Source of the DNA: Macrostomum lignano
Taxonomy: Eukaryota
Reading direction: 5' to 3'
Assembly: GCA_002269645.1 (NCBI GenBank)
Contig: NIVC01002059.1
Coordinates: forward strand, 219,322-283,321
DNA: 64,000 nucleotides
Every line of letters starts with the position of its first letter. Position 1 is the stretch's first letter. A program made the translations under genes and the position numbers. The notes beneath the pieces were generated by a model, which worked only from the letters and a program-made list of their open reading frames with translations, was not told where the DNA came from and searched no databases. Shown one piece after another: positions 16,301 through 62,669 of this stretch.

Positions 16301-16542
16301 GTGGTCGGCCCATCATTTTCCTCAGCTAAACGAAGTTATCAATTTTTTTCAAAAGAGAATTTCAGCTATTTCATACACGAAACGAATTAATTACGTAGTA
16401 AGCATAGGGTCTCTAGTTTTTTTTTATAGTTGCTATTATTTAGAGTAAGTTTTCAGTAACTTTGAAAAATCGGAAGAGGAACAGTTAGAAATTCAATGAA
16501 ATAACGATTTTGCGTTCAACAAGTCCAATAATCAATCAGGAT

Positions 16543-19500
16543 TCAGATTGTGGTTCTTAGTTTCGGGAATTTGTCGTAGCGCACAGTGTCGCAATAGGCC
16601 AACATGTCGTCCGGTGGGGTGGACCAAATCTGTCCATTTGCGTCTGCTAGCACTGTGTAGTCGTCTTCAACCGTGCTCCAACTTGACGGCGGTATACCGC
16701 TGCTGGCAAAAGTACTTAATGCACTTTGCATATGCTGCATCAGAGCCTGATCGCGCCGGTCCCAGCTATCAGCTGCGCGCGGCGCCGTGCCCAGCATGAG
16801 GAGCAGGTCGAGGCCGTAGAATGCTCCCGTGTGCTTGCTGGCGCCGCCGATGGCTAGAAATTTCGACGGGTATTTCAGACTGTAGCGCTGCACAAAGTGA
16901 TAGATTGGCGAGCTGCGTTTGGCCTGCTTAACTAGGGATTTTGCCAGGTAGCGATAGGGGCAGATGAAGCGCAATAGGGTGGCCGCTCTGGCTGCGGTTA
17001 GCAGGCCCTGCGGGAGATTGCACAGATATTGAGACTTTCAACGCCCGTTGAAAGCGTTACTTTGGCAAGAATCGCGGGGTCGTTTCACAAACCTAAAATT
17101 TACAATGCCGAAAACTCAGAATGCCGCTATTCTTTACAATGCTGAAATTTCATGAACCCGAATTTTCACAATTCTTTTCAGTCAGTAAAATTTGTCATCA
17201 TGAAATTTTTTTCGACATTGTAAAATTTCGGTATTATGAAATGGGCTGCATAAATTTTCGACAACATGAAATTTCTGATTCTAATTCATAAAGTGACGCA
17301 GAACGCCTCAAATTAAACCATTAACGACTTTTTGCCTGGCGACTTGTACCGTGACATCTGGTCGTGTATAGATCGGTCCTATATTAATTTTACGTGTTAT
17401 CTGCAAGACTGCAACGACTCTGGGGACAACGCAAGTGGCTCTGTGACAATTCTTGGCCTAGATTCCGGTTTTATGAGGAAAGAAAAAATCCATTTTTCAC
17501 TGCTTGCTTTATATAGAACAGAAATAAATGAACACCTGACCGCTTCCGGTTGGCTAGGAGCACAGATACTATTGTAGAATACTATTTTAGTATGTGGCCA
17601 GTAGTAACGTGCAGTATCAGTTGTGTACTGTCAAGACAGTCACAACCACAGATACTAAAATAACTAGATGATCCACTCGGGCATATTTACTTAGAAAAAC
17701 AGCTTTCTACTTTCAGTTCAGTAGCAAAGAAGAATACATAAGCTATTTTATGAAAATAAAGCCAGCTCAAACGACTTTGATAAGTTTAGAAGCCCAAGCT
17801 TGCAGGCGTAAACAGCTTGCTAATTGGTTCAGCAATAATGTACATTAGCCAGTCCACTGAAATGTACATGGCAGCTTTAGGCTGGAATTCCGAGAAGGCA
17901 ATAAAAATTGGGGCGGGGCGGGGGTAGTGTGGAAAGGCACGGTTGGAGGTTTAAGCTAGGGGGGTAAGTGCCAAAAAGAGCCTTGGCTTTAAAAGTACAT
18001 TAAATGCTTCAGTTTAACTTGCTACTGAACTGAAAGTAGCTTGCACGCAAATGTGCTGAATGGCCCATCTGGTTATTCTCGTATCTGTGGTCACAACTCG
18101 TATTTCTCTCACGTTGGCGGGGTCACCATTTTGCCAGGTGCGGTCCTGTCCTATCGCAGCTATAGGATGAACTGGAGCTCACAATGGTAGATTGCGTAGT
18201 AGGTAAGGGACTGAAGTAATGGCGCACTCGTGTTTGGCCATTATTTCAGTACCTTACCTACTACGCAACGTCATTGTCTATAAGACACATAGAGGCCATT
18301 ATTTCAGCATAGCGTAGTCTGGTGGCCATTATTTCAGCGTGCCGGAAGTGGTCATTATTTCACACTTTTTATCATGCTTTAATTGGCTGTTTTGAGAGTT
18401 ATTTTACCCATAGATGACTGAGATGTGTGTCATAGTTTTACCATAGACAACACGTGATGAGTGCTGATTTCGTTTACGTCTTGCAAGAAATCAGGAAAGC
18501 GGGTATTACAAGTGAAAGCTATTTGTCTTGCCAAACAACTATGGCTGGTGCATCTCGTCAAACAGCCCCGCTTATTAATTGGAAAAATTTTCTTGTCGAC
18601 GACTGAACGAACCGTGCGACCCATGCTTCAGTGGAGATGACACAGGAGATGCGGGTGAAGCATGGTAAGCATAATGTGTCAACATTGTAAGTAAATTAGT
18701 GGCTATACTATATGAAACTGAATTTTTTACAATGTCCATTAATCTGCAGGTCAGATGGATTCGGAACGCGCAGTTCGCTTCTTCGAGAACTGCCACTTCA
18801 AGGATTAATGAAGGTTTCAGTTTTAATGAGCAACTTCTGTTGAACAGTCTATGACTACTGTGTTGTTTTTTGTGTTTAATGTGTGCGTTTTCCATTGTTT
18901 GTTAGCTAAAATGTCTTGACTATCCTTTTTTCACTGTATTCCAGAATGCCATGTAGACTGCGATCATTCCATTATGTCAGTTAATAAATGCATAGTTAAC
19001 TAATCGTCTATGGTTCAAGCGCCTGCTAAAGCTGAAATAATTTAGATCGAAATTTCACATTATTTCACAGCTTTTGAAACGCAACCCCGTCAGCAGCAGC
19101 AGCCCATGCATCGGCTGCGTGCAGTACGACTCAGCGCGGATGATGTCGCCTGCCAGAGCTTAGACGGAGCAGGCGGACGCGGCGATAGAAGTGCGACAGC
19201 ATGCATTCAAAGGTACTCATCAATATTAGCAAACCTGCGAGTCCGAGCGCGACATATCGGGCCGTTTTAGACGAGCAATCAGCCGATCAGGACTGCCGGC
19301 TAGTTCCAGATCCTTGACCGTTTTAAGAACTTTCTGCCAGACTTTATGCCACTTGTCCGAGGCCCGGAAGCCGGGAAAACCTTCGTAGTGATCGGCTACG
19401 TTGCCAAATACTATGGGAATGTCGTCCCACGAGCCCAAGCCCAAAGGACCTGCCTCAGTGGGCGAAGAGATCAGAGTGACACTGTCCGGTGCCAGCCATT

Positions 19501-22500
19501 CTAGCGGGGCCGGCGAAGCTTTGGTGTTGCCGGACACGGACAGGCTGCCCTGTTTGGTCAGTCCGGCCAGGCTTGGCCACCAGTCCTCCAGGTAGCCGGT
19601 GCGAGTCCACGCCTTGAATACGTCTTCGTTCGATGTCAGGTAGACGAGCAGGCGGCCCTTTGATGATAACAGTCGGGCTTCAGTTAGCGTGCATTCATAC
19701 TAGTAAAAACCACCAGCGCCATCCCCAATGCTCCCTATACGGTAAATGCAAGCAGGCGCGTCCCCACGGGGGGGGGGGACATGCCCCCCCCCCCAGTAAA
19801 AGCTCTGGGGGACATGCCAATGCTTTGTTTCCCCCCCCCCACCCCACCTTGTGAGTCGTTGTGGTAATCAATAACTTTTCTTCAGGGCGCCAATAGCGCC
19901 ATAAGTGCCTGCGGCGCTAAAATGAGTGCCTGTGGCGCTAAAATGAGTGCCTGTGGCGCTAAAATGAGTGCCTGTGGCGCTAAAATGAGTGCCTGTGGCG
20001 CTAAAATGAGTGCCTGTGGCGCTAAAATGAGTGCCTGCGGCGCTAAAATGAGTGCCTGTGGCGCTAAAATGAGTGCCTGTGGCGCTAAAATGAGTGCCTG
20101 CGGCGCTAAAATGAGTGCCTGTGGCGCTAAAATGAGTGCCTGCGGCGCTAAAATGAGTGTCTGCGGCGCTAAAATGAGTGCCTGGAGCGCTAAAATGAGT
20201 GCCTGCAGCGCTAAAATGAGTGCCTACGGCGCTAAAATGAGTGCCTGCGGCGCTAAAATGAGTGCCTGTGGCGCTAAAATGAGTGCCTGTGGCTCTAAAA
20301 TGAGTGCCTGTAGCGCCAAAATGAGTGCCTGTGGCTCTAAAATGAGTGCCTGTAGCGCCAAAATGAGTGTCTACGGCGCAAAATAATCGAGTGCCAAAAT
20401 TTAGTCATTTACATGTACATGTTGAACTCTTGGCTTTGTCCCCCCACCGTAAAATCCATGGCGACGCCCCTGCATGCGTCGAGATACATACAGTTCCTAA
20501 ACTTCAGTCCGCCTTGAGTGAAATCGCCCCACAACCAGCTCTGAGGCAGTTCTGCCCATTCCGCTGACTCCTGAGTACATGCAAGCGCGCCAATACTGTA
20601 CGCAGGCACGCAACTCACACACGCGCTCACACAGGGTGCACAGCGGCCCTGACTGTCTAATCGTCAGACATGTACACTCTCTGTGCCTTGAGGTTGGCCC
20701 TCACGAGTGTGAATCTCGCACGACAACCCGCCGGCTAATTTTCGTGCTCAAGCACCAAACGAACGCGGGCCACGCACGGAATCGAACCAGGGGCCGTGGC
20801 GTGAGATTCAGACGCGTTTAACGCTGAGCTGGTCTGCCCCCCCTGCCTGCATTCCTCCACACTCTCGACTAAGATCTCACCTCGTCCATCGTCTCCAACT
20901 CGCGTCGGCACTCGGTGACATTGTCCACCTTACAGTTGAGCTGCGCCTCTGTAATGTTGGTCCACCTGTTGGCGTGGATCTTTTTCAATGCTTTCAACAT
21001 CTCGGGCGCCGAGTCCGGGATGCGGGACGGACCGCTGGACAGCCAGGCCCCGTGGACGAGTCGCCTGCCTGTCCGCTGCTGCAGTTGCAGCAGCGCCATT
21101 ACCATCGCCGCGCCGCTGCCGTGACCGAACACTGTGACTCTGGGGGGGGGAATTGACAACTACCTTTTTTCTTTTTTGTCTTTAATGGGTTTCTTTCTAC
21201 TATCGCCAATCCGTTTCTGCACCCCATCACCAATCCGTTTCTGCACCCCATCACCAATCCGTTTCTGCACCCCATCACCAATCCGTTTCTACACCCCATC
21301 ACCAATCCGTTTCTACACCCCATCACCAATCCGTTTCTGCACCCCATCACCAATCCGTTTCTACACCCCATCGCCAATCCGTTTCTACACCCCATCGCCA
21401 GTCCGTTTCTACACCCCATCGCCAATCCGTTTCTACACCCCATCGCCAGTCCGTTTCTACACCCCATCGCCAATCCGTTTCTACACCCCATCGCCAGTCC
21501 GTTTCTAAACACCATCGCCAGTCGGTTTCTACACCCTATCGCCAATCCGTTCCTACACCCCATCGCCAATCCGTTTCTACACCCCATCACCAATCCGTTT
21601 CTACACCCCATCGCCAATCCGTTCCTACACCCCATCGCCAATCCGTTCCTACACCCCATCGTTATGTCTGGAAAGTCTTACAAGATCGACAAAGTCGATA
21701 TCTCAGCAGCTCACTTGTTTTTATCCCCGCCGAAGTGCTCGACAGTCTTTCGCAGATGCTCGAGACCGCGAACCAGGTCCGACAGGCCGTAGTTGACCAC
21801 CCTGAAGCCGGTGGCGTCGCCAGGTGGCCGGAAGGTGCCATGGAAGGCCAGCCGGTAGCCGATACGGACAACAACGGCCTGAAGCTGGTCTGGCAAGCCG
21901 TCGTCCGAGTGCAGCAGCGAGTCCTGGCCGAGGCTGCGCGTAGTCTCGGACACGAAACCGGAGCCGGTGACGAACACAATCACCGGGTAGCCGCTGTTGT
22001 AGTCGCGCGGCCGGCCAATACTCAGAAACAGGCAGTCCTCGGACATGGCCGGCTCGCCAGGGACGCCGACTAGCGGGTCCGCTTCGGGCAGGCGGATCAT
22101 GGTGGTCATGTTCGGCTCTACGAGCGGCGGCTCCGGCGTGCGAACCTGGTGCAGCTGCCTGAGAGATGTTCCAAAAGCGATCGGTCAGTTTTCTAGATTG
22201 GTCAGTTTTCTAGATCGGTCAGTTTTCTAGATTGGTCAGTTTTCTAGATTGGTCAGTTTATTAGATTGGTCAGTTTTCTAGATCGGTCAGTTTTCTAGAT
22301 TAGTCAGTTTTCTAGATTGGTCAGTTTTCTAGATTGGTCAGTTTTCTAGATTGGTCAGTTTTCTAGATTGGTCAATTTATTAGATCGGTCAGTTTTCTAG
22401 ATTGGTCAGTTTTCTAGATTGGTCAGTTTATTAGATCGGTCAGTTTTCTAGATTGGTCAGTTTTCTAGATCGGTCAGTTTTCTAGATTGGTCAGTTTTCT

Positions 22501-25267
22501 AGATTGGTCAGTTTTCTAGATTGGTCAGTTTTCTAGATTGGTCAGTTTTCTAGATTGGTCAGTTTTCTAGATTGGTCAGTTTTCTAGATCGGTCAGTTTT
22601 CTAGATTGGTCAGTTTATTAGATTGGTCAGTTTTCTAGATTGGTCAGTTTTCTAGATTGGTCAGTTTTCTAGATTGGTCAGTTTTCTAGATCGGTCAGTT
22701 TTCTAGATTGGTCAGTTTATTAGATTGGTCAGTTTATTAGATTGGTCAGTTTTCTAGATTGGTCAATTTTCTAGATTGGTCAGTTTTCTAGATTGGTCAG
22801 TTTTTTAGATTGGTCAGTTTTCTAGATTGGTCAGTTTTCTAGATTGGTCAGTTTTCTAGATTGGTCAGTTTATTAGATTGGTCAGTTTATTAGATTGGTC
22901 AGTTTTCTAGATTGGTCAGTTTTCTAGATTGGTCAGTTTTCTAGATTGGTCAGTTTTCTAGATTGGTCAGCTTTCTAGATTGGTCAGCTTTCTAGATCGG
23001 TCAGTTTTCTAGATTGGTCAGTTTTCTAGATTGGTCAGTTTTCTAGATTGGTCAGTTTTCTAGATCGGTCAGTTTTCTAGATTGGTCAGTTTATTAGATT
23101 GGTCAGTTTTCTAGATTGGTCAGTTTTCTAGATTGGTCAGTTTTCTAGATTGGTCAGTTTTCTAGATTGGTCAGTTTTCTAGATCGGTCAGTTTTCTAGA
23201 TTGGTCAGTTTATTAGATTGGTCAGTTTTCTAGATTGGTCAGTTTTCTAGATTGGTCAGTTTTCTAGATTGGTCAGTTTTCTAGATCGGTCAGTTTTCTA
23301 GATTGGTCAGTTTATTAGATTGGTCAGTTTATTAGATTAGTCAGTTTTCTAGATTGGTCAGTTTTCTAGATTGGTCAGTTTTCTAGATTGGTCAGTTTTC
23401 TAGATCGGTCAGTTTTCTAGATTGGTCAGTTTTCTAGATTGGTCAGTTTTCTATATCGGTCAGTTTTCTAGATTGGTCAGTTTTCTAGATTGGTCAGTTT
23501 TTTAGATTGGTCAGTTTTCTAGATTGGTCAGTTTTTTAGATTGGTCAGTTTTCTAGATTGGTCAGTTTTTTAGATTGGTCAGTTTTCTAGATTGGTCAGT
23601 TTTCTAGATTGGTCAGTTTTCTAAATCAAGAGGCTAAAGTTACCTATGCCGGACCAGGTGATAATGAGAGCAGAACCGCGGACTGGAGTGCACATTGCAC
23701 TTGTGCACGCCGTCTATGAATCGGCAGTCGCTGGTCCGGTGCCCCAGGATGCACAATTCCAGACCGTGGATTTTCTCTGGCATGCGCCAACGGCCTGAAG
23801 AGATGTAAAACGGTAATTCAAATATTTAGGCTAGATTATCTGATCGGCCTTCCCGTTTTAATGAGGTTGCTCTACCAGCTCTGTTGAGATTGTCCTACCA
23901 GCTCTGTTGAGATTGTCCTACCAGCTCTGTTGAGATTGTCCTACCAAGTCTGTTGAGGTTGTCCTACCAGCTCTGTTGAGATTGTCCTACCAGCTCTGTT
24001 GAGATTGTCCTACCAAGTCTGTTGAGGTTGTCCTACCAGCTCTGTTGAGATTGTCCTACCAGCTCTGTTGAGATTGTCCTACCAGCTCTGTTGAGATTGT
24101 CCTACCAGCTCTGTTGAGATTGTCCTACCAGCTCTGTTGAGATTGTCCTACCAGCTCTGTTGAGATTGCCTAAGTTGAACTACCGTGATCAAATGGCATC
24201 CAAACGTGCATCCAAATAAAAACGATCCATCAGATGACAAGCGAGACTCTACCCAGCAGTTTGTCTGCGAGCTCCTTCAGCGGGCCGACCTCCTCTTGCG
24301 GCTTCAACGGGCACGGCTGCAGAGCGAATGGCACGGCTCGATAATTAGCTGAGCTGATGTTGCTGCCAAGGTACCAGGCGCATTCCAACTGGTTGACAAC
24401 GGCCAGGTACTGCGGAGGCGGTCGAATCAGCACCAACACTAGGTGCACAGCCAGGGACAGCAGACAGACGACTAGCAAGGTGCAGAAGGCGCTGTTGGAT
24501 ATGAGGTAGCTGGCGGCGCCCGTAATCGAGTCGAGTTTACTGCCGGTGCCCAGGTAGATCAGAGCTGATTTCGTTATCAGGTCCGCGTTCGGCACCTGAC
24601 TGTTGGGAAAGAAGTCGTGAACGTTGCGCTTGCGCCGCCATTGAAGAGTTGTGATTTTTATCTTCTGACTGCGCGTCAGCACCGACGGAGAAGGTGCCGG
24701 CGAGGACGGTTGATCCGCGGCTGATGATGGAGACGTGGGTGTCTCAGCCGGAGGCGGAGGCGGTGGTGTCGAAGATGTCGGAGGTGCCGTGGGAGGTGAA
24801 GGCGGTGGTGTCGAAGATGTCGGAGGTGCCGTGGGAGGTGAAGGCGGTGGTGTCGAAGATGTCGGAGGTGCCGTGGGAGGTGAAGGCGGTGGTGTCGAAG
24901 ATGTCGGAGGTGCCGCGGGAGGCAGAGGCGGTGGTGTCGAAGATGTCGGAGGTGCCGCGGGAGGCAGAGGCGGTGGTGTCGAAGGCCTCGGTGGAGCTGG
25001 ATTTAATGGAGGTGTCGAAGAAGGCCGAAGCGGAAGATCATTAGGAAGAGGAGTCGGGGTTGTCAAAGGCTCAGGTGGAGGTTTCGTAGGTGTCTTGGGA
25101 GGCGGAGGTTGGGGTGTCTTTTGGGGTGGAGACGGTGTCTTCGAGCGCGGAGCTGGCGGTGTCTTCGAGCGCGGAGCTGGCGGCGTCTTCGAGCCGGGAG
25201 GTGACTGTGTCTTAGCACGTCGAGGCTTTTTACGCGACTTGGACTTCTTTGCCGATGTATTCTCCAT
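16543..25267 (-). CDS. Type II membrane cholinesterase-like protein without catalytic Ser/His (neurotactin-like), ~932 aa, 6 exons
   Basis: Exons 25267-24253, 23794-23644, 22158-21715, 21139-20881, 19699-19235 (acceptor less certain) and 17007-16543, all with GT-AG and consistent phases. Type-B carboxylesterase motifs: YRAVPFA..GRWRMP, SEDCLFLSI, GYRLAFHGTF, NYGLSDLVRGL, FGGDKNKVTVFGHGSGAA, RFICP. Pro-rich N-terminus, then a hydrophobic helix (AFCTLLVVCLLSLAVHLVLVLI). Confidence 0.88.
17710..18036. mobile_element. MITE, Tc1/mariner-like (TA TSD)
   Basis: 18-bp TIR CTTTCAGTTCAGTAGCAA / TTGCTACTGAACTGAAAG, with TA on both sides. Confidence 0.7.
18181..18277. repeat. Long hairpin (32-bp stem, 13-nt loop) in the last intron of the esterase-like gene
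   Basis: 18192-18223 pairs with 18237-18268 (one mismatch, one G-T). Three GGCCATTATTTCA-like direct repeats follow. Confidence 0.85.
19753..20472. mobile_element. Non-autonomous TIR element (hAT-like CAGG termini) carrying a 21-bp tandem array
   Basis: Termini CAGGCGCGTCCCCACGG / CCATGGCGACGCCCCTG match at 14 of 17 positions. Internal array AAAATGAGTGCCTGTGGCGCT (~23 copies, 19901-20385). A second partial copy lies at 48625-48910. No clear TSD. Confidence 0.65.
20570..20840 (-). mobile_element. tRNA-derived SINE copy 1
   Basis: Minus strand GGGGCAGACCAGCTCAGCGTT (A box) ... GGTTCGATTCC (B box, 20778-20788). The body GAGGGCCAACC..AAGGCACAG..GTGTACATG..GGGCCGCTG is shared with 31770-32010, 47661-47785 and 62251-62330. 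Confidence 0.75.
21204..21661. repeat. 24-bp intronic minisatellite (~19 copies)
   Basis: Unit CCAATCCGTTTCTACACCCCATCG/A. Confidence 0.95.
22179..23623. repeat. 17-bp intronic minisatellite (~85 copies)
   Basis: Unit GATTGGTCAGTTTTCTA. It fills almost all of intron 2 (22159-23643). Confidence 0.97.
23863..24170. repeat. 23-bp intronic minisatellite (~13 copies)
   Basis: Unit CTACCAGCTCTGTTGAGATTGTC. Confidence 0.95.
24760..24985 (-). repeat. 36-bp coding tandem repeat (12-aa PP(S/L)PP(T/A)APPTSST unit)
   Basis: About 6 in-frame copies in exon 1 of the esterase-like gene. Confidence 0.9.
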
Positions 25268-25489
25268 GGCCTCCTGAGCAGAAGCGGCACTAATAAACCA
25301 CTGCTTGATGAATTCACGAATATTATTAATAATAAAGCTAAATTTCGATTCTATAATTGAAAACTAAGAATCAAGATTAGATCCATTAGAATTCGATGGC
25401 TTCTTAGCCTAAATGACATGCTGCACTCGCAACTCAAAGCCTTCTAGCGGGGCCATAGACTGTTAATTTTCTTTTTTTAAATCTAAGTC

Positions 25490-26042
25490 AGAGTCGCTCG
25501 CGCAGTAAAGCACTTTCGGTTCTGTAGTTCGGCCTTACTCTGTTCAAGCGACCTGTCACGCTGACTGGGGTTTGGCCATAGACAAATCCGTCCAGACAAA
25601 ACAATGCAGAGACAGGAGAAGCTGGAAACTCGCCGCAACTTTGCTTGCTTGCCGGTCTCCGGCAGCAGTTCATGAAAAAACAGCTTGATAAACTTGTGAG
25701 CGCAGCTCGGACAAAACACCTGCTGGCTGCATCTGCAATTCGGAAGTCCAGCAGGTGAGGCATTGGGGATTCAGTGCTGAAAAACTGAAAACTTCCCATC
25801 TCGCAGCGAAATTGAAGGAGTACAGCGTTCTGGGGCTTCAGCTGTCCATAAAAAAAGACTTCCTATTCAAACAGGGGAATAATATCTTGGGGGGAGAGGT
25901 GTCTTGGGGGGCGAAGTCCTTAAATGGCGGTGTCGCGGGGGTTGGAGGTGTCTTACTCGTAGGAGGCGGTGTCTTTGGGGAGGTGTCTTGGAGCGCGGAT
26001 TGCGTGATGAAGGCTTAGCCGGTTTCGCAGATTTATTTTCAT
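25490..26042 (-). pseudogene. Degenerate tandem duplicate of exon 1 of the neurotactin-like gene
   Basis: ATG(G)AAAATAAATCTGCGAAA would read MENKSAKPAKPSSRNPRSKTPP if one G is restored, versus MENTSAKKSK...PRSKTPP in the intact gene. KTPP motifs are repeated, with frameshifts and stops. An acceptor TATACTAG lies at 26083. Confidence 0.6.
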
Positions 26043-26439
26043 AGCTACTTTGTGCAGAGCAGGCGCTGGTTGAGCAGCTTAGCTAGTATAAATATTAGCA
26101 ATGAAAACCGATTGCACTTTGAGAATTGACGCTTTCAAATGGCTAGCCGAGGTAGCAAAGTCAGTTTTTCGATTCTCAGAAGAATTGAACGGTTTTAACA
26201 TTTGGAATTCTTTGAACTCATTGGCTGCTGCACCGATCCAGAGAACTTCGTCGTGATTTTTTGTAGAAAAACTGACGTCCTGTTTCTCACATTAAGGAAT
26301 ACATATCCCCAGCAACATTGAAAACCGACAGACCAGAACCCAGTGCGCACTGCATTTGCTTAAAAATAATGCCAGTCTGAGACAACTGAAACATCTCAGG
26401 CACAATTAGTGTAATCGCACATGCACCAACCAAAGTGAG

Positions 26440-26445
26440 TTTATT
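26440..26445 (-). terminator. ELP4 poly(A) signal
   Basis: AATAAA 83 nt after the stop codon, followed by TTTGGTTGGTG. Confidence 0.7.
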
Positions 26446-26527
26446 TAGCCAAAATAAAATGCCAGTAGAATTTGCATCAAATACCAGAACCACAGTTTGA
26501 TTAGTACGACAGATACGGTAAGAGTAA

Positions 26528-26700
26528 TCAAAAGTCCAATGGAGTACCCTGCGCAGAGGTGCCGCAGGTTGGCTGCGGCACTGATTTGCTCACTCGACTG
26601 GCCGTCTCCGAGATGTCGGGTGGCAGGTGCAGCCGCTGTAATTGGTTGTAGGAGAGCGGAAATACAGCTGTCTGTCTGTCTGTCTGTCCGTCTGTCTGTC

Positions 26701-26737
<37 letters not shown>

Positions 26738-26844
26738 GTGTGTTTGTCTGTCTGTCCGTCTGTCTCTGTGTGTTTGTCTGTCTGTCTGTCCGTCTGTCTG
26801 TCTGTCTGTCTGTCCGTCTGTCTGTCCGTCTGTCTGTCTCTGTG

Positions 26845-26883
<39 letters not shown>

Positions 26884-26941
26884 CTGTCTCTGTGTGTCTG
26901 TCTCTCTGTCCGTCTGTCTCTCTGTCCGTCTGTCTGTCTCC

Positions 26942-27019
<78 letters not shown>

Positions 27020-27024
27020 GTGCC

Positions 27025-27079
<55 letters not shown>

Positions 27080-27190
27080 GTGTGTTTGTCTGTCTGTCCG
27101 TCTGTCTGTCTGTCTGTCTGTCTCTGTGTGTTTGTCTGTCTGTCCGTCTGTCTATCTGTCTGTCTGTCCGTCTGTCTGTCTCTGTGTGTT

Positions 27191-27221
<31 letters not shown>

Positions 27222-29797
27222 CTGTCTCTGTGTGTCTGTCTCTCTGTCCGTCTGTCTGTCTCTGTCTGTCTGTCTGTCTGTCCGTCTGTCTGTCTCCGTC
27301 TGTCTGTCTGTCTGTGTGCCTGCCTGTCTGTCTGTCTGTCTGTCTGAGCCCAACTACCTGCACCTAAGCCTACAGGGCACATATAGCGGCCATCAGTCAC
27401 CACAAAACGCAAAACACGCCAACCTGAATAAGGAAATTCTTCCGGCGCACTCTGAAGCCAAACTCGAGCGTGTCCGGCCGGGCCACCGGGGCCGCGGAGC
27501 CGGGCAGGCAGGGCAGCTTGGCCAGGCTCAGCAGGCCGTGCAGGTCGCGGTACAAAGGATTGGCGGCACGGCGTCGACCGCCGGCCACCTGCAGAGAGTC
27601 CAGCCGCAGACAGTAGTCGACCAGGTGCCGCATTCGATCGGACAGGATCGGCCGCTGAAAATCGTTGGCAATTGTTCCAAGTCCACCACCACAGATACTA
27701 CTATAAGTAGATAGGCCACTCATTGGCTCGCTTAAACAGTTCTCTACTTGCAGTTCAGTAGTACGAATGCGTAAGCGCAGGGCCTATCCACCAGTTCTCA
27801 CTTCTCAGCCAATTCCACATGAACTCACCTGCAGTCGCAGACAGTCAGGCACGGTGAGCCAGACGGTGCACAGGTGCTTGGCGCAGAGATCCCGCAGGCT
27901 GTACAAACAGCGCAGGGCGTCGCTCTCGTTGTCTAAGCGGCCCCAGAGTGGGGATGCGAAACCTGGGATAACTGCAGGCGAGGCGGGGAGCGAAGAGGTT
28001 TTTATAGTTACAGGAAATCTAACCCAGTAGATTAGATAGACCGGAAATCTCACCCAGTAGATCAGATAGACTGGAAATCTCACCCAGTAGATCAGATAGA
28101 CTGGAAATCTCACCCAGTAGATCAGATAGACCAGAAATCTCACCCAGTAGATCAGATAGACTGGAAATCTCACCCAGTAGATCAGATAGACCAGAAATCT
28201 CACCCAGTAGATCAGATAGACGGGAAATCTCACCCAGTAGATCAGATGGACCGGAAATCTCACCCATTAGAGCAGATAAACCGGAAATCTCACCCAGTAG
28301 ATCAGATAGACCAGAAATCTCACCCAGTAGATCAGATAGACGGGAAATCTCACCCAGTAGATCAGATGGACCGGAAATCTCACCCATTAGATCAGATAGA
28401 CGGGAAATCTCACCCAGTAGATCAGATGGACCGGAAATCTCACCCATTAGAGCAGATAAACCGGAAATCTCACCCAGTAGATCAGATAGACTGGAAATCT
28501 CATCCATCGCACCCAGTAGAGCAGATAAACCGGAAATCTCACTCATCTCACCCAGTAGAGCAGATAAACCGGAAATCTCACTCATCTCACCCAGTAGAGC
28601 AGATAAACCGGAAATCTCACTCATCTCACCCAGTAGAGCAGATAAACCGGAAATCTCACTCATCTCACCCAGTAGAGCAGATAAACCGGAAATCTCACTC
28701 ATCTCACCCAGTAGAGCAGATAAACCGGAAATCTCACTCATCTCACCCAGTAGAGCAGGATTCGAAATCTCGGTCCATGGCAAGTGTCAAAAAAAGAAGT
28801 CAGTACCAAGAAAAAGATAACAAATATGAAGGAATTAAACTAGCCAGCAAGTCTTACCAACTTTGAGCAGACTCTGCGTATCCTCAGTGGGCCGGTCGGG
28901 ATACCGGAATTCCGGCCCGCCATCGACAAGGCGCTGCCGAATTTGATCCAAAGCCAGGCTGGCATTGGCAGGGAATGAGCTGCGGGTTGGAGCATCAGTA
29001 TAGAAGTATTATCTCGGTGTGTATGACCAGAAATTCAAGGCCAAGAGTAAGATTACCTACCCACCTACCTACCTACCTAACTACCTACTTATCTATCTAT
29101 CTATCTATCTATCTAATTTCAGTTTAAACTCATTATACTACTTACGATGCTCTTATCATTAAGCGGTATGGAACGGGTATTTTTGAATTGCGTGATACTG
29201 CTGCGAAAGGCCATATTGGGTAATCGCGGATCCAGGGACTCACTACATCACTCACTAAGGGCTAGGCAATTTCCTACAGAAAAACCTATTTAGTTTAGCA
29301 TTTTTCAACGAACGCCAGGATCTGTCAATTGGAACGCACCCGAATTCGTCAAGATGAAGAACGTTCAATCGAAGCGAGCCAGCCTCTTCGAGCTTTGTCA
29401 AGTCTAACTTCTTTGACAGATCGAAACTTTTAGCTCCGGTTGTGGATTTGTCAAGGCTGTGCCGCTCCTATAATGGAGAGGGGTGAGTCAGTTTGTTCGC
29501 AAAAAGCAGCAGACATGCCCGTTGCACTGAGTCAATTTACTACGAGAAAATCATTGAGGCGAAAATGATACGATTAATCAGTATAAAGTAGTAAAAAATA
29601 TTATTATTTATAGTCACTCGCCTCGAACTGCGGCGCGTTCATGTAACGCCAGGCGATGGCCAGGCCGTCGTCGTTGCCAGCGCCGCTGTCTCCAATGCCA
29701 CCTGCTGGTTGCTGTTGCTGTTGTTGTTGTGATTTTGTACCCTCCTCAAGATCTGGCAGATTCTGGAATTAAGTGCGTTGTTTAGTAGAGGTAGTAA

Positions 29798-29883
<86 letters not shown>

Positions 29884-29893
29884 ATAGTAGTAG

Positions 29894-29979
<86 letters not shown>

Positions 29980-30542
29980 CGGTAGTAGTAGTAGTCGTCG
30001 TAGTAGTAGTATCAAAGAGAACCCCGCAATTACTCCCATAGGACATCTCACACCCCGCCACCCACCGCTAGCAGGTACTCCGAGTGCGCTTGGTTGGCGG
30101 CCACTAGCATCACGTGATGCCCATCCAGCAGGCTCTGGGCCAGGAAATAGCGAGTCAACACGCCTGCATAGGCGCCTGTTGCGTCTTCGTCTGTTGTTGG
30201 GTTTTTTATGGGTGTCGTAGAAACAATTGGCATATGATATTATCAGAGTGATGTTACAATAGGGATTTCATAGTCGCTGCCAGCTAATTAAAAAGGGATG
30301 CCAGTGTTTCCATCCTCACCGACAACGCACAACCCGCCGACAGCCAGCCCGCCGCCAATCAATACGTCGAGAGCGGCCACTCCGCAGCTGGTGACCGTCG
30401 CCTGCTGATTCTGCGCCACCAACTGCTGTTGCTTCTGCTGCTGTTGCTGCTGTCCACAGACGGGCCGGCCGCCGGGCACGCGAGGCCGAGGCCGCGAGAT
30501 GCCGACGCCGGGGCCGCCTGGAGCAACGCGACGAAAGCCAGA
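26528..30542 (-). CDS. ELP4: Elongator complex protein 4, 8 exons, 406 codons, no in-frame ATG
   Basis: Exons 30542-30320, 30190-30066, 29762-29622, 29467-29340, 28979-28858, 27971-27829, 27654-27424 and 26635-26528, all in frame. ELP4 motifs: TSCGVAALDVLIGGGLAVGGLCVVDED, LAIAWRY, SFDLSKK, GFASPLWG, NPLYRDLHGLL..KLP, RLHLPPD...LDF*. Confidence 0.93.
26668..27345. repeat. (TCTG)n-derived microsatellite in the last ELP4 intron
   Basis: Imperfect TCTG/TCCG/TGTG runs. Source of the spurious TDRQ/VCLS ORFs. Confidence 0.98.
28014..28770. repeat. 30-bp minisatellite changing to a 39-bp unit
   Basis: Unit AAATCTCACCCAGTAGATCAGATAGACCGG. From ~28500 the units carry 9 extra nt (CTCATCTCA). Confidence 0.95.
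29786..30011. repeat. (TAG)n microsatellite in ELP4 intron 2
   Basis: About 70 TAG triplets. Confidence 0.98.
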
Positions 30543-30598
30543 CTGAAGAAATGGCAAGAAACACAAGACTATAGCTAGGCAATTGGACTGTCTTAATT

Positions 30599-30860
30599 TA
30601 TCTTCTTCATTTATCCTTCCCTCCGGTGAAATGTCTATGGCCGGACTGTCTCACCCTCTATCTCTCCTCATCTATCCTTCCCTCCGGTGAAATGTCTATG
30701 GCCGGACTGTCTCACCCTCTATCTCTCCTCATCTATCCTTCCCTCCGGTGAAATGTCTATGGCCGGACTGTCTCACCCTCTATCTCTCCTCATCTATCCT
30801 TCCCTCCGGTGAAATGTCTATGGCCTGACTTTCTCACCCCCTATCTCTCCTCATATATCC
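30599..30860. repeat. 61-bp tandem repeat (~4 copies) just upstream of the first ELP4 acceptor
   Basis: Unit TATCTCTCCTCATCTATCCTTCCCTCCGGTGAAATGTCTATGGCCGGACTGTCTCACCCTC. Confidence 0.92.
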
Positions 30861-30943
30861 TTTCCTCCAATAAAATAATCAACATCAATTAACAACAGAA
30901 ATTCAAAGCCAATCGGCAAGTAACCACACAAATAGTAAAAAGT

Positions 30944-30949
30944 TTTATT
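30944..30949 (-). terminator. Candidate poly(A) signal of the ankyrin gene (most distal of several)
   Basis: AATAAA followed by TTTGTGTGGTT on the minus strand. Other AATAAA motifs occur near 31160, 31430 and 31490. Confidence 0.45.
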
Positions 30950-31769
30950 GACTGGCGCATCCACGGCGCAGCGAGATAATCGCATTTGTACGAGCTATTT
31001 GCCAAGCACACAGGGGTAAAAGGAGTGCAGATAAATTAACACTAGCACACTTTCAATCGACCATTTATGGACCGGAGGAGTTGAAATAGCAAACAATACT
31101 TTGTTATAATAAAAAAGCTAACTATATAAACATTTATCCCAATAAATTCGCCTGCAAAGTTTATTAAGCTGTCATGAAATAAAGAAAAGTTGACATCAAG
31201 CTATTTAAAACAAAAACTATAAATAAAATAACAACTTGAACAAATAATAAAGCTATCCAAATCATAATAATACAGGGATAAGAATGAAAGCGGAATCAAC
31301 TAATTTAACTTAAAGAGAGGCAAGACGCTGATAAATGAAAAATATTTCTAACGGACGCAAACAAAGAGTGGCGCATTTTGTAACTTGGCCTTGGCAAAAC
31401 AATCTTTCAGAGTTAAAAATGTAGAAAATTTATTATTTAATTCGCACTAAAAAATACGACCGGAAGCAAATCTGTGCCTTCTATCCTACATTTTATTTAG
31501 CAGCAAAAGTAATAAATTCAATCTACACGAATGCGCGATACACCCTACTAAAAGTCAGTCGTGTGAAAATTAAGCTAAAAATGTAAACATTGCATTTATT
31601 TTATGTATTGTTTTAACATAATATTGAAAATAAAAAAACTATTTCTAAAAGCCTAATTATTTATACGTTAATAAATAGTAAATTTCTGTTGTCAATATTA
31701 CAGATTTTTTATTACAGGTTGTGTGCACCCATTGTCACACAACCGGTGAGAGGCATTGCTGCCCATTCC

Positions 31770-32010
31770 GCCAACTCCCCTGAGCAGGCACACAAGCGCG
31801 CGGATACGTACGCAGTCATACGCACAGGCACACACTCACACAGGAGTGTACAGCGGCCCTAACTTTATTTATCGTTAGGCATGTACACTTCACTGTGCCT
31901 TGGGGGTTGGCCCTCAGGGGCGTTAATTGCACGAGCAACGACTGCACTTGGAATCGAGCCTGGGCCGCTGGCAGATCAGAGCGCCGCGCTAGACTACTGG
32001 GCTACGGCCC
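31770..32010 (-). mobile_element. tRNA-derived SINE copy 2
   Basis: GGGCCGTAGCCCAGTAGTC (A box), GGCTCGATTCC (B box, 31950-31960), and a body homologous to copy 1. Confidence 0.75.
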
Positions 32011-32685
32011 TATATATTACAGATGCATTATACTAGCTAATATGAACTAATATAAATATGAACTCCTATGATTTGTAGTTTAACTCTTTAAAATTTTGCT
32101 AGTCAAAGGCGAGAGACAAAGCATCAATTAAAATCCGACGAATAGCATTAAAGCATTCTCATTGTAGCGGCATAAAATCGACTTTTTTATTTACTGACTG
32201 TAACTGATAGACTGCTAGGGAAAGGCCAGCAAAAATATAGATTATATACTGAAGCTCAGCAAGATTTAAAACTTTGCGACGCACAAAGCTGTTCAATACT
32301 CGTAGAATTCCAAATCGATTCGTTTTCTCTCCTGTTGACAGACAGAAGCCGGGTTTACAGGGGATTTTTTACAAGGAGAATGTTACACCGATAGCAATAG
32401 ACTATAGAGGCTTAGGAGCTGGTAGTATCTGTTGTAATAACAGTTAATTTACTAACTAAAAGCATCCAGATGGACAAGTTTCTTAAAAAAATCCAACATT
32501 CCATCTTTGCGCTTCACAGACGTTCATCTAAGCAGCTAGTTGCTATCGACGCAAAACAAGCGAAACGACACACTAAATTAACAAAGAAAGTATACCGTTA
32601 TTTTTTTAAATTTATTCTGCATATAAAGAAAGCAACCAAGACTGCAATGATTCGCGCGGACAAGCTACTTAGAGTAGATGAAATG

Positions 32686-33713
32686 TCAAATGTCCCGACC
32701 ATTATTAGCATGGGTAAAGCCGTTAGCCAGCTGCTGATGCTGATGGCCTTGGCGAGTTTCGAATCCGTCAACTGACTCGCCGTCGCCCTCGTCGTCCGTG
32801 GTAACGTAGCCGTTGGTGACGATCTCCGGATAGGCCGGGGCCAGCATCTGCCTCATCTCCGGGTCTTCACCGGCCAGGTCCAGTGGCGTCTCGCCGCGCT
32901 GACAGAAAGGGGAAGAGGATTGTCAGTTAGACAAAATAAACAGGAAATTACTTGTTTAACAAAATAAATCTCTTGGGGTAAACTTTGCAAATCACCCCAA
33001 TTAAAGGCATAACCCCATAATTACAAGCAAAACACCCCCATTAAGAGCAGAACACCTTAGGTAACAGCAGAACACCTCAAGTAAAAGCAGAACACATCAG
33101 GTAAAAGCAGAACAGACAGACAACAATACACCTCAGGTAAAAGCAGAAAATTCCTATGAAAAGCAGAATACCTCAGTTAAATCAGAACATCCCAATTAAA
33201 AAAGAGCATCCATAATATAAAATCACAAAACTCCAATACTCCAATCAGAAGCCGAACATCTCAAATGGAAAGCACGTTACAAAGATTGGGACCAGAAAAA
33301 CGAATAGAAGCGGAATATTGCAGCTAAAAGCAGATTCTCACGCACCATGGACTTCCTCTCCGGATTGGCCCCGTAGCTAATCAGCAGTTCCACAGCCGCC
33401 TTCGCTTCCCGATTCACGGCCCAGTGAAGCGCCGTCCAGCCCGACATGTCAGCGGCGCCAACATCGGCTCCGTGGTCCAGCAGGCACTTGGCTAGCGGCA
33501 GGTGGCCGTGGTAGATGGCGAACATCAGCGGAGTGAAGTCGGCCTCGCCGCGAGCGCCCGATCTCGGCGGCTGGGATCGATCATCGACGCTTAGGCCGGG
33601 ACAGCGGCTGAGCAGGCACTCGGCTATGTCCACTAGGGTGCGATCGAAGCGTGACCTGGCGGGGAGGTGGCGGTGCCGTTAGCTGGCCGACTGGGACTGG
33701 CAGACAGACACTC

Positions 33714-33767
<54 letters not shown>

Positions 33768-34652
33768 CAAGACAGGCGGACAGACAGACAGACACTAAGA
33801 CAGACAGACAGACAGACAGACAGATGAAGACAACAAGACAGACAGCTAGAGTAGTTAAACACTCAACCCCTCTCCAATTTACCTGTCCAACGGCAGGGCC
33901 GCCGGTCCATTAGAAGTCGGCGGCGCGATCGGTGCCGAAGAAACACTTCGGGTGGCAGTGTCGCCCTCTGCGTCAACAGCAGATTGCTGCTGCTGGTTGC
34001 GCGCGGCGGCGGCGGCAGCGGCAGCAGCGACGGCGGCCAACGCGTCCTCGCCGTGGCCATTGCCGGCGGAATCGCCGTTACCAGAGGCGGCGGCGGCAGC
34101 CTGCAGCTCGGCCATGACAGCGGCGTACACAGGCGAGTTGGCCTGGTCCAGACAGGCCGTGCTAACCCGCTTGCCGTTCTGACAGATTTGACTCTTTGGC
34201 GCCGCCCGGCACAGCTCGTGCAGGCAGTTGCGGCCGTCGTTATTCCGGTGCAGGAAGTCGCACCTGGCGTCCAGCAGGCAGCGCACAACGGCCGGCTGGC
34301 AGAAATAGCAGGCCATGATGAGGGCCGACCAGCCTCTCTCGTCTACAGCGCTGGGATCGGCGCCGGCTTTCAATAGCATTTGAACAATTTCATCTTGGCC
34401 AGTCATAGCGGAATGGTGCAGCGCAGTGTGCTGCTTGCTGTCGCGAGCGTCGACCTGGCAGCCGGCTGACAGCAGCAGGCGGACAATCTCTGGCTTGCCC
34501 TGGCTGGCCACGTGGATGGGGCAGGACTGGTGCACGTGGCTCACCCAGTTGACATCGATGCCGCCAGATTCTAATAATTGGCGAACTTTCCATTCGCGAC
34601 CGTAGCTGCAGCACTCCCAGAATGCCTCCTGTTTGGTGGCAGCCTGGCCCAT
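32686..34652 (-). CDS. Ankyrin-repeat protein, ~430 aa, 3 coding exons, putative N-myristoylation
   Basis: Exons 34652-33883, 33655-33346 and 32898-32686 are in frame. Ankyrin repeats: CPIHVASQG, TALHHSAMTG, SALIMACY, TPLMFAIYHG, TALHWAV, TPLDLA. N-terminus MGQAATK. Confidence 0.92.
33700..33845. repeat. (ACAG)n microsatellite in the ankyrin gene intron
   Basis: Direct observation. It reads (TCTG)n on the transcribed strand, just upstream of the acceptor. Confidence 0.95.
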
Positions 34653-34807
34653 GTTGAGCGAATTGGCTGAAATGATTATATAGTATTATTGCTTACTAAG
34701 AGTTTTTAACAAACAGTTTGATGCGAAAGCATAATTAAGAACAAACAAATAGCCAAAAAATATATTTAAGGACACTCGCGAATTTATTCAATTTTGCTTT
34801 AGGGGAT

Positions 34808-35075
34808 GGCGCCAACTCACAGACAGGCAGACAATGTCTAAGCGGCGCCAACTCACAGACAGGCAGACAATGTCTAAGCGGCGCCAACTCACAGACAGGC
34901 AGAAAATGTCTAAGCGGCGCCAACTCACAGACAGGCAGACAATGTCCAAGCGGTGCCAACTCACAGACAGGCAGACAATGTCTAAGCGGCGCCAACTCAC
35001 AGACAGGCAGACAATGTCTAAGCGGCGCCGACTCACCGAGAGGCAGACAATGTCTAAGTCGCGCCAACTCACAGA
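34808..35075. repeat. 36-bp minisatellite (~7 copies)
   Basis: Unit GACAATGTCTAAGCGGCGCCAACTCACAGACAGGCA. Confidence 0.95.
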
Positions 35076-47660: not shown

Positions 47661-47785
47661 TTGTGCAAATCACACCTATGAAGGCCAACCCCCAAGGCGC
47701 AGAGAGTGTACATGCCTGACGATTTGAAAGTCAGGGCCACTGGGCATTGTCAGCGTGACTATATTCGTGTATGTGCTCAGGAGCT
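47661..47785 (+). mobile_element. SINE body fragment (copy 3)
   Basis: GTGCAAATCACACCTATGAAGGCCAACCCCCAAGGCGCAGAGAGTGTACATGCCTGAC..GTCAGGGCC matches copies 1 and 2. Confidence 0.7.

Positions 47786-62636: not shown

Positions 62637-62669
<33 letters not shown>

What the first reader, a model, noticed from the sequence alone, without database searches (positions are those of the whole stretch)
25274..34667. Candidate polycistronic unit: ankyrin gene -> ELP4 -> (remnant) -> neurotactin-like gene
Seen: three co-oriented genes 1.3-2.1 kb apart. Each first coding exon follows a 3' splice acceptor (TTTCAG 14 nt before the ankyrin ATG, TTCTTCAG at ELP4 codon 2, TTCTGCTCAG 6 nt before the esterase ATG), and AATAAA signals lie between the genes. 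I found no upstream donor for ELP4 or the esterase gene. Known: flatworms, nematodes and tunicates process operons by SL trans-splicing. Inference: an operon linking tRNA wobble modification (Elongator) to a myristoylated ankyrin protein and an adhesion molecule.
Basis: partly seen in the sequence, partly recalled or inferred. Interest (0 to 1): 0.7.

Follow-up and report, generated by a model that had tools for sequence, protein, structure and literature searches.

The report
Three neighbouring flatworm genes, operon unproven
These are three same-strand genes of the flatworm Macrostomum lignano whose 5' ends look like spliced-leader acceptor sites. Nothing I could test shows that they share one transcript, so this is most likely ordinary gene neighbourhood in a species already known to trans-splice.

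Summary
The window is the last 64 kb of Macrostomum lignano scaffold NIVC01002059.1. This flatworm has a published 35-nt spliced leader (SL) ending in ATG; 30% of its genes are trans-spliced and 15% sit in operons.

An ankyrin gene, ELP4 and a non-catalytic esterase (neurotactin-like) gene lie head-to-tail on the minus strand. Each has an acceptor just before its coding start, and AATAAA signals lie between them. One claim fails: consensus donor motifs do exist upstream of all three acceptors.

SL trans-splicing is plausible for the ankyrin gene and especially for ELP4. ELP4's first exon has no genomic ATG, and the SL's AUG would give MSGFRRV… in frame.

The operon is not supported:
- The gaps are about 2.05 kb and 1.15 kb from the first poly(A) signal. 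After subtracting the repeats I could find, the first gap is about 1.5 kb. The species' criterion is under 1 kb, with a mode near 100 bp.
- The ankyrin and ELP4 locus tags differ in prefix in all three genomic copies, which I take to mean separate transcription units.
- The ELP4-esterase spacer carries independent 3.2-kb transposon insertions in the other two copies.
- The gene order is absent from an older paralogue locus and from two tapeworm loci.

No RNA data could be reached, so co-transcription is not excluded.

The parts
32686..34652 (-). Ankyrin-repeat gene (BOX15_Mlig000481g1). CDS exons 34652-33883, 33655-33346 and 32898-32686, 430 aa. The N-terminus MGQAATK fits the N-myristoylation pattern.
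   Evidence: Spliced translation. 99% identity to M. lignano UniRef A0A1I8I5U3, and NCBI PAA61215.1 is the same protein minus 11 N-terminal residues.
34667..34672 (-). TTTCAG acceptor in front of the ankyrin gene. The first exon base is 34666, 14 nt before the ATG. Predicted SL trans-splice site.
   Evidence: It matches the published trans-acceptor motif [T/C]TNCAG (PMC8629364). UniProt model A0A1I8JHC5 (P0127) starts PIRSTWARL, which is the translation from base 34666. The context is identical in copies L002 and L006.
30543..32685 (-). Ankyrin-ELP4 spacer, 2143 nt, 38% GC. It holds the first AATAAA at 32616-32611, a SINE-like repeat at about 31738-32010, an AT-rich stretch at 30869-31737, and a 61-nt x 4.4 minisatellite at 30599-30868 that carries four GTGAG donor motifs.
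   Evidence: The spacer is 2221 nt in L002 and about 2564 nt in L006.
26528..30542 (-). ELP4 (Elongator subunit 4, PAXNEB; BOX15_Mlig018002g1). Exons 30542-30320, 30190-30066, 29762-29622 (GC donor), 29467-29340, 28979-28858, 27971-27829, 27654-27424 and 26635-26528. Exon 1 has no genomic ATG.
   Evidence: The exon chain reproduces NCBI protein P0121 exactly. Pfam PAXNEB, E = 1.2e-58. The NCBI model is 5'-partial, and the UniProt models start at an ATG inside intron 1.
30543..30550 (-). TTCTTCAG acceptor of ELP4. The SL's terminal AUG joined at 30542 reads MSGFRRVAPGG... in frame.
   Evidence: The SL sequence CGGTCTCTTACTGCGAAGACTCAATTTATTGCATG is from PMC8629364.
25274..26527 (-). ELP4-esterase spacer, 1254 nt. 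It holds AATAAA at 26445 and 26037, a degenerate copy of esterase exon 1 (the 'remnant', 25999-25935), and donor-like sites at 26290, 25956 and 25538. It is also the site where the two other copies carry transposon insertions (about 25703 and about 25670).
25274..25284 (-). CTTCTGCTCAG acceptor 6 nt before the esterase ATG. The first exon base is 25273.
   Evidence: 7 of 8 pyrimidines followed by CAG. It does not match YTNCAG.
16546..25267 (-). Cholinesterase-like, neurotactin-like gene. Exons 25267-24253, 23794-23644, 22158-21715 and 21139-20881, then exons within about 19699-19229 and 17037-16546 (boundaries approximate). It has a proline-rich N-terminal domain and one hydrophobic span. The esterase domain reads FGHGSGA where relatives have FGESAG.
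   Evidence: No M. lignano protein for it exists in the 5.8-billion-protein database, and no gene is called there in the NCBI annotation.

Best explanation
These are three adjacent, separately transcribed protein-coding genes on the minus strand of a Macrostomum lignano scaffold.

The ankyrin gene and ELP4 are each most likely matured by addition of the species' single 35-nt spliced leader, at 34666 and 30542. For ELP4 the leader's 3'-terminal AUG serves as the start codon (MSGFRRV...). That explains why both public annotations failed to find a start.

Each upstream gene ends at the first AATAAA after its stop codon (32616 and 26445). Each downstream gene is driven from its own promoter inside the 1.2-2.1-kb spacer.

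The esterase-like gene has a good acceptor at 25273. It is either SL-spliced there or joined to a short non-coding first exon ending at the donor at 25538.

Shown: gene identities and exon structures, the acceptor sequences, the lack of an ATG in ELP4, the spacer content, and the variation between copies. Inferred: SL use at these sites, poly(A) site choice, and independent promoters.
For: - Species and locus: a 100% match to NIVC01002059.1.
- Published facts for this species (PMC8629364): the SL ends in ATG; 30% of genes are trans-spliced; the trans-acceptor motif is [T/C]TNCAG; the operon criterion is a repeat-adjusted gap under 1 kb, with a mode near 100 bp; only about 40% of trans-spliced genes are in operons.
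- Acceptors: TTTCAG and CTTCAG match the motif, with a chance rate of 4.5-5% per site.
- ELP4 has no in-frame ATG in exon 1 or contiguous with it, and no upstream ATG exon ending at a consensus donor. Joining the SL's AUG gives an in-frame open reading.
- A UniProt model of the ankyrin gene starts exactly at base 34666.
- Gaps: about 2045 nt and about 1145 nt from the predicted cleavage sites. The first is about 1500 nt after subtracting the 270-nt minisatellite and the roughly 270-nt SINE.
- The locus-tag prefixes differ in all three copies: Mlig000481 or Mlig031276 for the ankyrin gene, against Mlig018002 for ELP4. Prefixes were assigned to clustered transcription units (PMC5730564).
- The second spacer is 1254 nt here but about 4.5 kb and 4.8 kb in copies L002 and L006. 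The cause is two different TIR-transposon insertions 33 nt apart. The L002 copy keeps intact esterase exons 1-4 (checked there only); L006 keeps the same 5' context and ATG.
- An older ankyrin paralogue locus has neither ELP4 nor the esterase nearby. The E. multilocularis ankyrin relative has no ELP4 within 10 kb, and Sparganum ELP4 is followed by PAN2.
Against: - I could reach no RNA evidence: no SL-bearing reads, poly(A) peaks, 5'-end data or spanning reads.
- The true repeat-adjusted distance depends on the authors' RepeatMasker track and on measured 3' ends. If the ankyrin mRNA used the distal AATAAA at 30949, the repeat-adjusted gap to ELP4 would be only about 120 nt, which is typical of an operon.
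- The authors note that RNA-seq transcription units tend to break in repeat-rich intergenic regions, so different locus-tag prefixes are weak evidence.
- ELP4 locus tags run up to g6 across three loci. That could mean its transcription unit holds a second, unsubmitted 'gene'.
- No promoter was identified in either spacer.
- A flatworm study reports chimeric (polycistronic) gene models with gaps of several kb (PMC12582326).
Confidence: 0.55

Rival explanations
1. The ankyrin gene and ELP4 form a two-gene SL-resolved operon with an unusually long, repeat-inflated intercistronic region. It may be a 'hybrid' operon that also has an internal promoter.
For: The genes are on the same strand and adjacent in all three copies. 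ELP4 almost certainly needs SL addition. About 40% of trans-spliced genes in this species are in operons, and repeats inflate operon gaps (PMC8629364). About 540 nt of the gap is identifiable repeat. A distal AATAAA at 30949 would leave a repeat-adjusted gap of about 120 nt.
Against: The first AATAAA lies 70 nt after the stop codon, and by my inspection GT/T-rich sequence follows it. From there the gap is about 1.5 kb after the repeats I could identify, above the 1-kb criterion. Four consensus donors sit 112-295 nt upstream of the ELP4 acceptor and would compete with trans-splicing in a read-through RNA. The locus-tag prefixes differ in all three copies. The pairing is not seen in tapeworms.
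Confidence: 0.2
2. The full three-gene polycistron proposed by the first reader: one promoter upstream of the ankyrin gene, with SL trans-splicing resolving all three mRNAs.
For: All three genes are co-oriented and have non-random 5' acceptors. The SL's AUG is in frame with both ELP4 and the esterase ORF.
Against: All the points against the two-gene version apply. In addition:
- The esterase gene has no M. lignano protein in the 5.8-billion-protein search and no called gene at any of the three loci.
- Its acceptor does not match YTNCAG.
- A good donor (AGA|GTAAGG at 25538) lies 265 nt upstream.
- Two of the three copies carry 3.2-kb transposons in this spacer. One of these carries a separately tagged ORF.
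Confidence: 0.07
3. One or more of the acceptors are ordinary cis-splice acceptors of unannotated non-coding first exons, so no SL is involved. This applies chiefly to the esterase gene (donor at 25538) and the ankyrin gene (donors in the 36-nt minisatellite at 34820-35072).
For: Consensus donors exist upstream of every acceptor. Parasitic flatworms often use the same acceptor for both cis- and trans-splicing (PMC12582326).
Against: For ELP4, no upstream exon can supply an in-frame ATG through a consensus donor. For the ankyrin gene, a public model begins exactly at the acceptor. No upstream exons are annotated.
Confidence: 0.18

Closest known systems
SL-resolved operons of Macrostomum lignano (Ustyantsev & Berezikov 2021, PMC8629364; transcription units of Wudarski et al. 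2017, PMC5730564)
   Same: Same species and same single SL. The genes are co-oriented and adjacent, the downstream genes have YTNCAG-type or pyrimidine-rich acceptors, and the gaps contain repeats.
   Different: The gaps are about 1.5 kb (after the repeats I could identify) and about 1.15 kb, against a criterion of under 1 kb and a mode near 100 bp. The ankyrin and ELP4 locus tags do not share a prefix. SL reads were not available.
Short-spacer metazoan operons: C. elegans SL2-type, and Schistosoma mansoni and tapeworm candidates (gap of 300 bp or less; S. mansoni median 99 bp; PMC12582326)
   Same: Head-to-tail genes with a poly(A) signal followed by a trans-splice acceptor.
   Different: The gaps here are 10-20 times longer. 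They also contain many poly(A) signals, consensus donors and mobile elements.
Flatworm mRNAs that use the SL's 3'-terminal AUG as initiator (Cheng et al. 2006, as cited in PMC9851317)
   Same: The SL ends in AUG. The ELP4 acceptor is in phase 0 with the conserved ORF, and there is no genomic ATG.
   Different: This was shown experimentally in S. mansoni. Here it is only inferred from sequence, for an M. lignano gene.
Drosophila neurotactin and other non-catalytic cholinesterase-like adhesion molecules
   Same: An N-terminal cytoplasmic region, a single hydrophobic span, then a COesterase domain lacking the canonical nucleophile serine (FGHGSGA). A sawfly neurotactin is among the best hits.
   Different: Only about 30% identity over 25-40% of the protein, so orthology is not established. 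The N-terminal domain is a proline-rich tandem repeat.

Membership tests
M. lignano SL operon (Ustyantsev & Berezikov criteria) | Adjacent genes on the same strand with no opposite-strand gene between them | tested here: met
   Only the ankyrin gene and ELP4 are called. No convincing opposite-strand ORF lies in either spacer.
M. lignano SL operon (Ustyantsev & Berezikov criteria) | The downstream gene carries the SL, shown by SL-bearing reads at its 5' end | not testable with these tools
   No RNA-seq was reachable. The sequence is compatible: ELP4 matches YTNCAG and lacks an ATG. The esterase acceptor is pyrimidine-rich but does not match YTNCAG.
M. lignano SL operon (Ustyantsev & Berezikov criteria) | Repeat-adjusted intergenic distance under 1000 bp, ankyrin to ELP4 | tested here: not met
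   About 2045 nt from the first poly(A) signal, and about 1500 nt after removing the 270-nt minisatellite and the roughly 270-nt SINE. Caveat: the authors' repeat track and measured 3' ends were not available.
M. lignano SL operon (Ustyantsev & Berezikov criteria) | Repeat-adjusted intergenic distance under 1000 bp, ELP4 to esterase | tested here: inconclusive
   About 1145 nt from the first poly(A) signal, with no tandem repeat. This is close to the threshold. The spacer is about 4.5-4.8 kb in the other two copies before repeat subtraction.
M. lignano SL operon (transcription-unit evidence, Wudarski 2017) | Both genes cut from one assembled transcription unit, so they share a name prefix | tested here: not met
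   The ankyrin gene is Mlig000481g1, Mlig031276g1 or g2. ELP4 is Mlig018002g1 or g6. The meaning of the prefix is inferred from the Methods. The authors warn that transcription units split in repeats.
Short-spacer flatworm or nematode operon (gap of 300 bp or less) | Intercistronic distance of tens to a few hundred nt | tested here: not met
   The gaps are 2143 nt and 1254 nt from CDS to acceptor. The thresholds are from PMC12582326.
SL-AUG-initiated ORF (Cheng 2006 type) | The SL ends in AUG, the acceptor is in phase with the ORF, and no genomic initiator exists | tested here: met
   SL sequence. An in-frame junction. No in-frame ATG in or contiguous with exon 1, and no consensus-donor ATG exon upstream.
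SL-AUG-initiated ORF (Cheng 2006 type) | An SL-mRNA junction observed in cDNA | not testable with these tools
   No transcript data for M. lignano were reachable.
ELP4 / PAXNEB | A PAXNEB domain across the protein | tested here: met
   PF05625, E = 1.2e-58, covering residues 50-407. Tapeworm ELP4 is the next best hit.
Neurotactin-like non-catalytic cholinesterase-like protein | A COesterase domain without the nucleophile serine, in type II membrane topology | tested here: inconclusive
   COesterase, E = 4.7e-35. FGHGSGA replaces FGESAG, and one hydrophobic span precedes the domain. Topology was not predicted with a tool, and identity to neurotactins is only about 30%.

The most novel reading that the evidence does not exclude
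This could be a genuine long-spacer SL operon, or a hybrid operon with internal promoters. In it, 1-2-kb gaps loaded with repeats and transposons would be transcribed through, and the second cistron (ELP4) would depend entirely on the spliced leader for its start codon. That would extend the accepted geometry of flatworm operons well beyond the ~100-bp mode.
Probability: 0.1. Interest if true: 0.35.

Novelty: new member of a known kind. Interest (0 to 1): 0.2.

Why it matters
Very little changes if the best explanation is right. SL trans-splicing and operons are already described genome-wide in M. lignano, and operon partners are generally not functionally related. The proposed link between Elongator, an ankyrin protein and an adhesion-like molecule should therefore be dropped.

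Two small practical points remain:
- The public ELP4 models are '5'-partial' or start inside an intron. The likely reason is that the start codon is supplied by the spliced leader, and this type of annotation error can be fixed systematically.
- A sizeable, apparently intact cholinesterase-like gene is missing from the public protein sets of this model organism.

Tried and rejected
- An Rfam gathering scan of the whole window found nothing.
- A search for the SL sequence in the window, allowing 3 mismatches, found nothing. No SL RNA gene or cis-encoded leader lies here.
- The sigma-70 promoter and terminator scan does not apply to a eukaryote and was ignored.
The 432-aa UniRef protein has no contig on record.
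- Supplements of four M. lignano papers were searched for Mlig018002, Mlig000481, Mlig031276, ELP4 and elongator. There were no hits, or no files were held.
- I first read 'gN' in the locus tags as position within one transcription unit. I dropped this once identical families appeared on different contigs. I also dropped the idea that the prefix number reflects transcript length.
- I first misread megablast rows as a duplication in L002. They were self-hits of L003.
- Brute-force reconstruction of the 356-aa neighbour gene in L001, meant to test the naming rule, timed out and then gave 38 ambiguous models. I abandoned it.
- The TATATAA 24-30 nt before the ankyrin ATG was considered as a promoter. 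It would put the transcription start on the ATG itself, so I judge it coincidental.
- The minisatellite donors upstream of ELP4 were tested as a source of a start codon. They give the wrong phase and an in-frame TAG, so they were rejected (and inspection).

Full report
**Identity of the sequence**

The spliced ankyrin protein is 99% identical to a Macrostomum lignano protein. Looking up the NCBI ELP4 protein returned two scaffolds of assembly GCA_002269645.1. One of them, L003 (NIVC01002059.1, 235849-259821, reversed), is 100% identical over 23,973 bp to window 40500-16528. The window is therefore the last 64 kb of that 283,321-bp scaffold, and record position = window position + 219321.

Two further near-identical copies of the locus exist: L002 on NIVC01001111.1 and L006 on NIVC01003296.1. 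This fits the published redundancy of the assembly.

**What is known for this species**

- M. lignano has one 35-nt spliced leader, CGGTCTCTTACTGCGAAGACTCAATTTATTGCATG.
- 30% of its genes are trans-spliced and 15% are assigned to operons.
- The top motif at trans-splice acceptors is [T/C]TNCAG.
- After subtracting repeats, gaps between trans-spliced neighbours are bimodal, with the main peak near 100 bp. The authors call an operon when the repeat-adjusted gap is under 1 kb. About 40% of trans-spliced genes meet this (PMC8629364).
- In parasitic flatworms the working threshold is 300 bp, and the S. mansoni median is 99 bp. Chimeric gene models with gaps of several kb have nevertheless been seen (PMC12582326).

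**The genes (minus strand)**

- *Ankyrin gene:* three exons, 34652-32686, 430 aa, starting MGQAATK. This start fits the N-myristoylation pattern by inspection.
- *ELP4:* eight exons, 30542-26528, one with a GC donor. The chain reproduces NCBI protein PAA61214.1 residue for residue once 14 N-terminal residues are added. PAXNEB, E = 1.2e-58.
- *Esterase-like gene:* it starts at 25267 and runs to about 16546 through introns filled with minisatellites. The first four exon junctions are clean, and exons 1-4 are intact in L002; the only indel there lies in an intronic poly-C tract. It has a COesterase domain (E = 4.7e-35), and FGHGSGA replaces the catalytic FGESAG.
- No M. lignano protein for the esterase-like gene exists in the 5.8-billion-protein database, and no gene is called there in any of the three copies. 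The GenBank annotation excluded transcripts that overlap repeat annotations or are weakly expressed. Its absence is therefore not proof of a pseudogene.

**The observation**

A YTNCAG ending within 20 nt upstream of a position occurs 4.5-5% of the time. A CAG preceded by at least 7 of 8 pyrimidines occurs 1.5% of the time. The ankyrin and ELP4 sites match the published motif. The esterase site does not, but it has a good pyrimidine tract.

AATAAA signals are present. The first lie 70 nt and 83 nt after the stop codons. By my inspection of the sequence, GT-rich or T-rich sequence follows both.

The 'remnant' is a degenerate copy of part of esterase exon 1.

The claim of 'no upstream donor' fails. 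The species' donor consensus occurs five times in the first spacer, and four of those lie 112-295 nt from the ELP4 acceptor. It occurs three times in the second spacer, including AGA|GTAAGG at 25538. It also occurs repeatedly upstream of the ankyrin gene.

**Trans-splicing**

ELP4 is the strongest case.
- Its reading frame has no ATG in exon 1 or upstream of it before the previous stop codon.
- None of the 25 possible upstream ATG-to-GT exons in phase 0 ends at a consensus donor.
- The NCBI model is 5'-partial in all three copies. The two UniProt models start at an ATG inside intron 1.
- Joining the SL's AUG at 30542 gives MSGFRRVAPGG… in frame. From memory, this resembles the MSFRKR-type N-termini of yeast and fly Elp4.
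- Use of the SL's AUG as initiator is established in S. mansoni (Cheng et al. 2006, cited in PMC9851317).

For the ankyrin gene, one UniProt model (A0A1I8JHC5) begins PIRSTWARL. That is the translation starting at base 34666, the first base after TTTCAG, followed by a 1-nt frame difference. This suggests a transcript boundary at the acceptor. There the SL's AUG would open a short out-of-frame upstream ORF.

**The operon**

This is the part that lacks support.

1. *Distances.* From the predicted cleavage sites the gaps are about 2045 nt and about 1145 nt. The only repeats I could identify in the first gap are a 270-nt minisatellite and a SINE-like element of about 270 nt, which has copies at 20530-20727, 47663-47742 and 62249-62326. 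That leaves about 1.5 kb. The second gap has no tandem repeat.
2. *Annotation.* Locus-tag prefixes derive from clustered transcription units. The ankyrin gene and ELP4 have different prefixes in all three copies. This is an inference, and transcription units are known to break in repeats.
3. *Spacer plasticity.* The first spacer is 2143, 2221 and about 2564 nt in the three copies. The second is 1254 nt here but about 4.5 kb and 4.8 kb in L002 and L006. The cause is two different 3.2-kb elements with terminal inverted repeats, inserted 33 nt apart, about 400 nt upstream of the esterase ATG. The L006 element carries a multi-copy 121-aa ORF with its own locus tag, Mlig009256g2.
4. *Competing donors.* Four strong donors just upstream of the ELP4 acceptor would be expected to compete with trans-splicing if that region were part of a read-through RNA.
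5. *Synteny.* A 67%-identical ankyrin paralogue sits between a pyruvate kinase gene and an unrelated gene, with no ELP4. The Echinococcus ankyrin relative has no ELP4 within 10 kb. Sparganum ELP4 is followed after 180 bp by PAN2.

**Limits**

- I could reach no M. lignano RNA data, so none of this is direct evidence.
- If the ankyrin mRNA used the distal AATAAA at 30949, the repeat-adjusted gap to ELP4 would be only about 120 nt.
- A species-specific repeat library might mask more of the spacers.
- ELP4 locus tags numbered up to g6 across three loci could mean that its transcription unit holds a second, unsubmitted gene.

I therefore put separate transcription at about 0.55, a two-gene ankyrin-ELP4 operon at about 0.2, and the full three-gene polycistron at about 0.07.

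**Verdict**

The features are real but ordinary for this species. The operon is an untested possibility that fails the species' own distance criterion as far as I can measure it. The suggested functional link has no basis. The most useful by-products are the SL-donated start codon of ELP4 and an unannotated cholinesterase-like gene.

Noticed in passing
window 30542 (minus strand); also L002 9959 and L006 9959: ELP4 has no genome-encoded start codon. NCBI models are '5'-partial' and UniProt models start at an ATG inside intron 1. The spliced leader's terminal AUG would supply Met1 in frame (MSGFRRV...).
   Followed up: yes
L002 14837-18066 (site = window ~25703) and L006 ~15308-18574 (site = window ~25670): Two different ~3.2-kb elements with terminal inverted repeats (CCCTATGAAAAATTGGCCCGAATTTTC... 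and CCGTCAAACGTTTCACCCGGAATTT...) are inserted 33 nt apart in the two other copies of the locus, about 400 nt upstream of the esterase ATG. The L006 element carries a 121-aa ORF belonging to a multi-copy family (11 cluster members on many contigs). This may be an insertion hot spot, perhaps a promoter region.
   Followed up: partly
window ~31738-32010, with copies at 20530-20727, 47663-47742 and 62249-62326: A SINE-like interspersed repeat. By inspection of this copy its 5' part looks tRNA-derived, with box A- and box B-like sequences. It carries its own AATAAA and a GTGAG motif.
   Followed up: partly
window 16546-25267 (minus strand): An apparently intact, very divergent, non-catalytic cholinesterase-like gene with a proline-rich repeat N-terminus. 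It is absent from the NCBI and UniProt protein sets for M. lignano.
   Followed up: partly
window 19904-20395, 21202-21661, 22179-23627, 26668-27346, 28013-28758, 29783-30011, 33701-33845, 34808-35077: The introns and spacers of all three genes are packed with mini- and microsatellites (17-, 21-, 24-, 30/39-, 36- and 61-nt units, plus CTGT and TAG runs). Several units contain perfect splice-donor motifs.
   Followed up: partly
window 29622/29621 (ELP4 intron 3 donor): The exon chain that reproduces the NCBI ELP4 protein requires a GC-AG intron (donor GCGAGT).
   Followed up: no
L005 24654-24834 (Sparganum proliferum AP044636.1): In this tapeworm, ELP4 is followed only 180 bp later by a same-strand PAN2 gene. 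That spacing fits the flatworm operon threshold.
   Followed up: no
window 5707-7869 (+), 13059-13955 (+), 38909-38990 (-), 40717-41067 (+), 47888-48379 (+), 54268-56100 (+), 62485-63015 (+): Other content of the window:
- a 720-aa single-exon ORF with no Pfam match and a glycine/arginine-rich tail, possibly from a mobile element;
- a WD40 protein that looks like RACK1;
- a tRNA-Gln;
- a 116-aa ORF with TTTCAG 23 nt before its ATG;
- a C2H2 zinc-finger exon;
- an R7-type RGS protein (DEP-DHEX-RGS);
- the start of an MCM gene.
   Followed up: partly
L001 9920-10001: The 67%-identical ankyrin paralogue also has a TTTCAG about 73 nt upstream of its ATG. Its locus tags (Mlig029212g2 and g4) hint that it shares a transcription unit with another gene.
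   Followed up: partly
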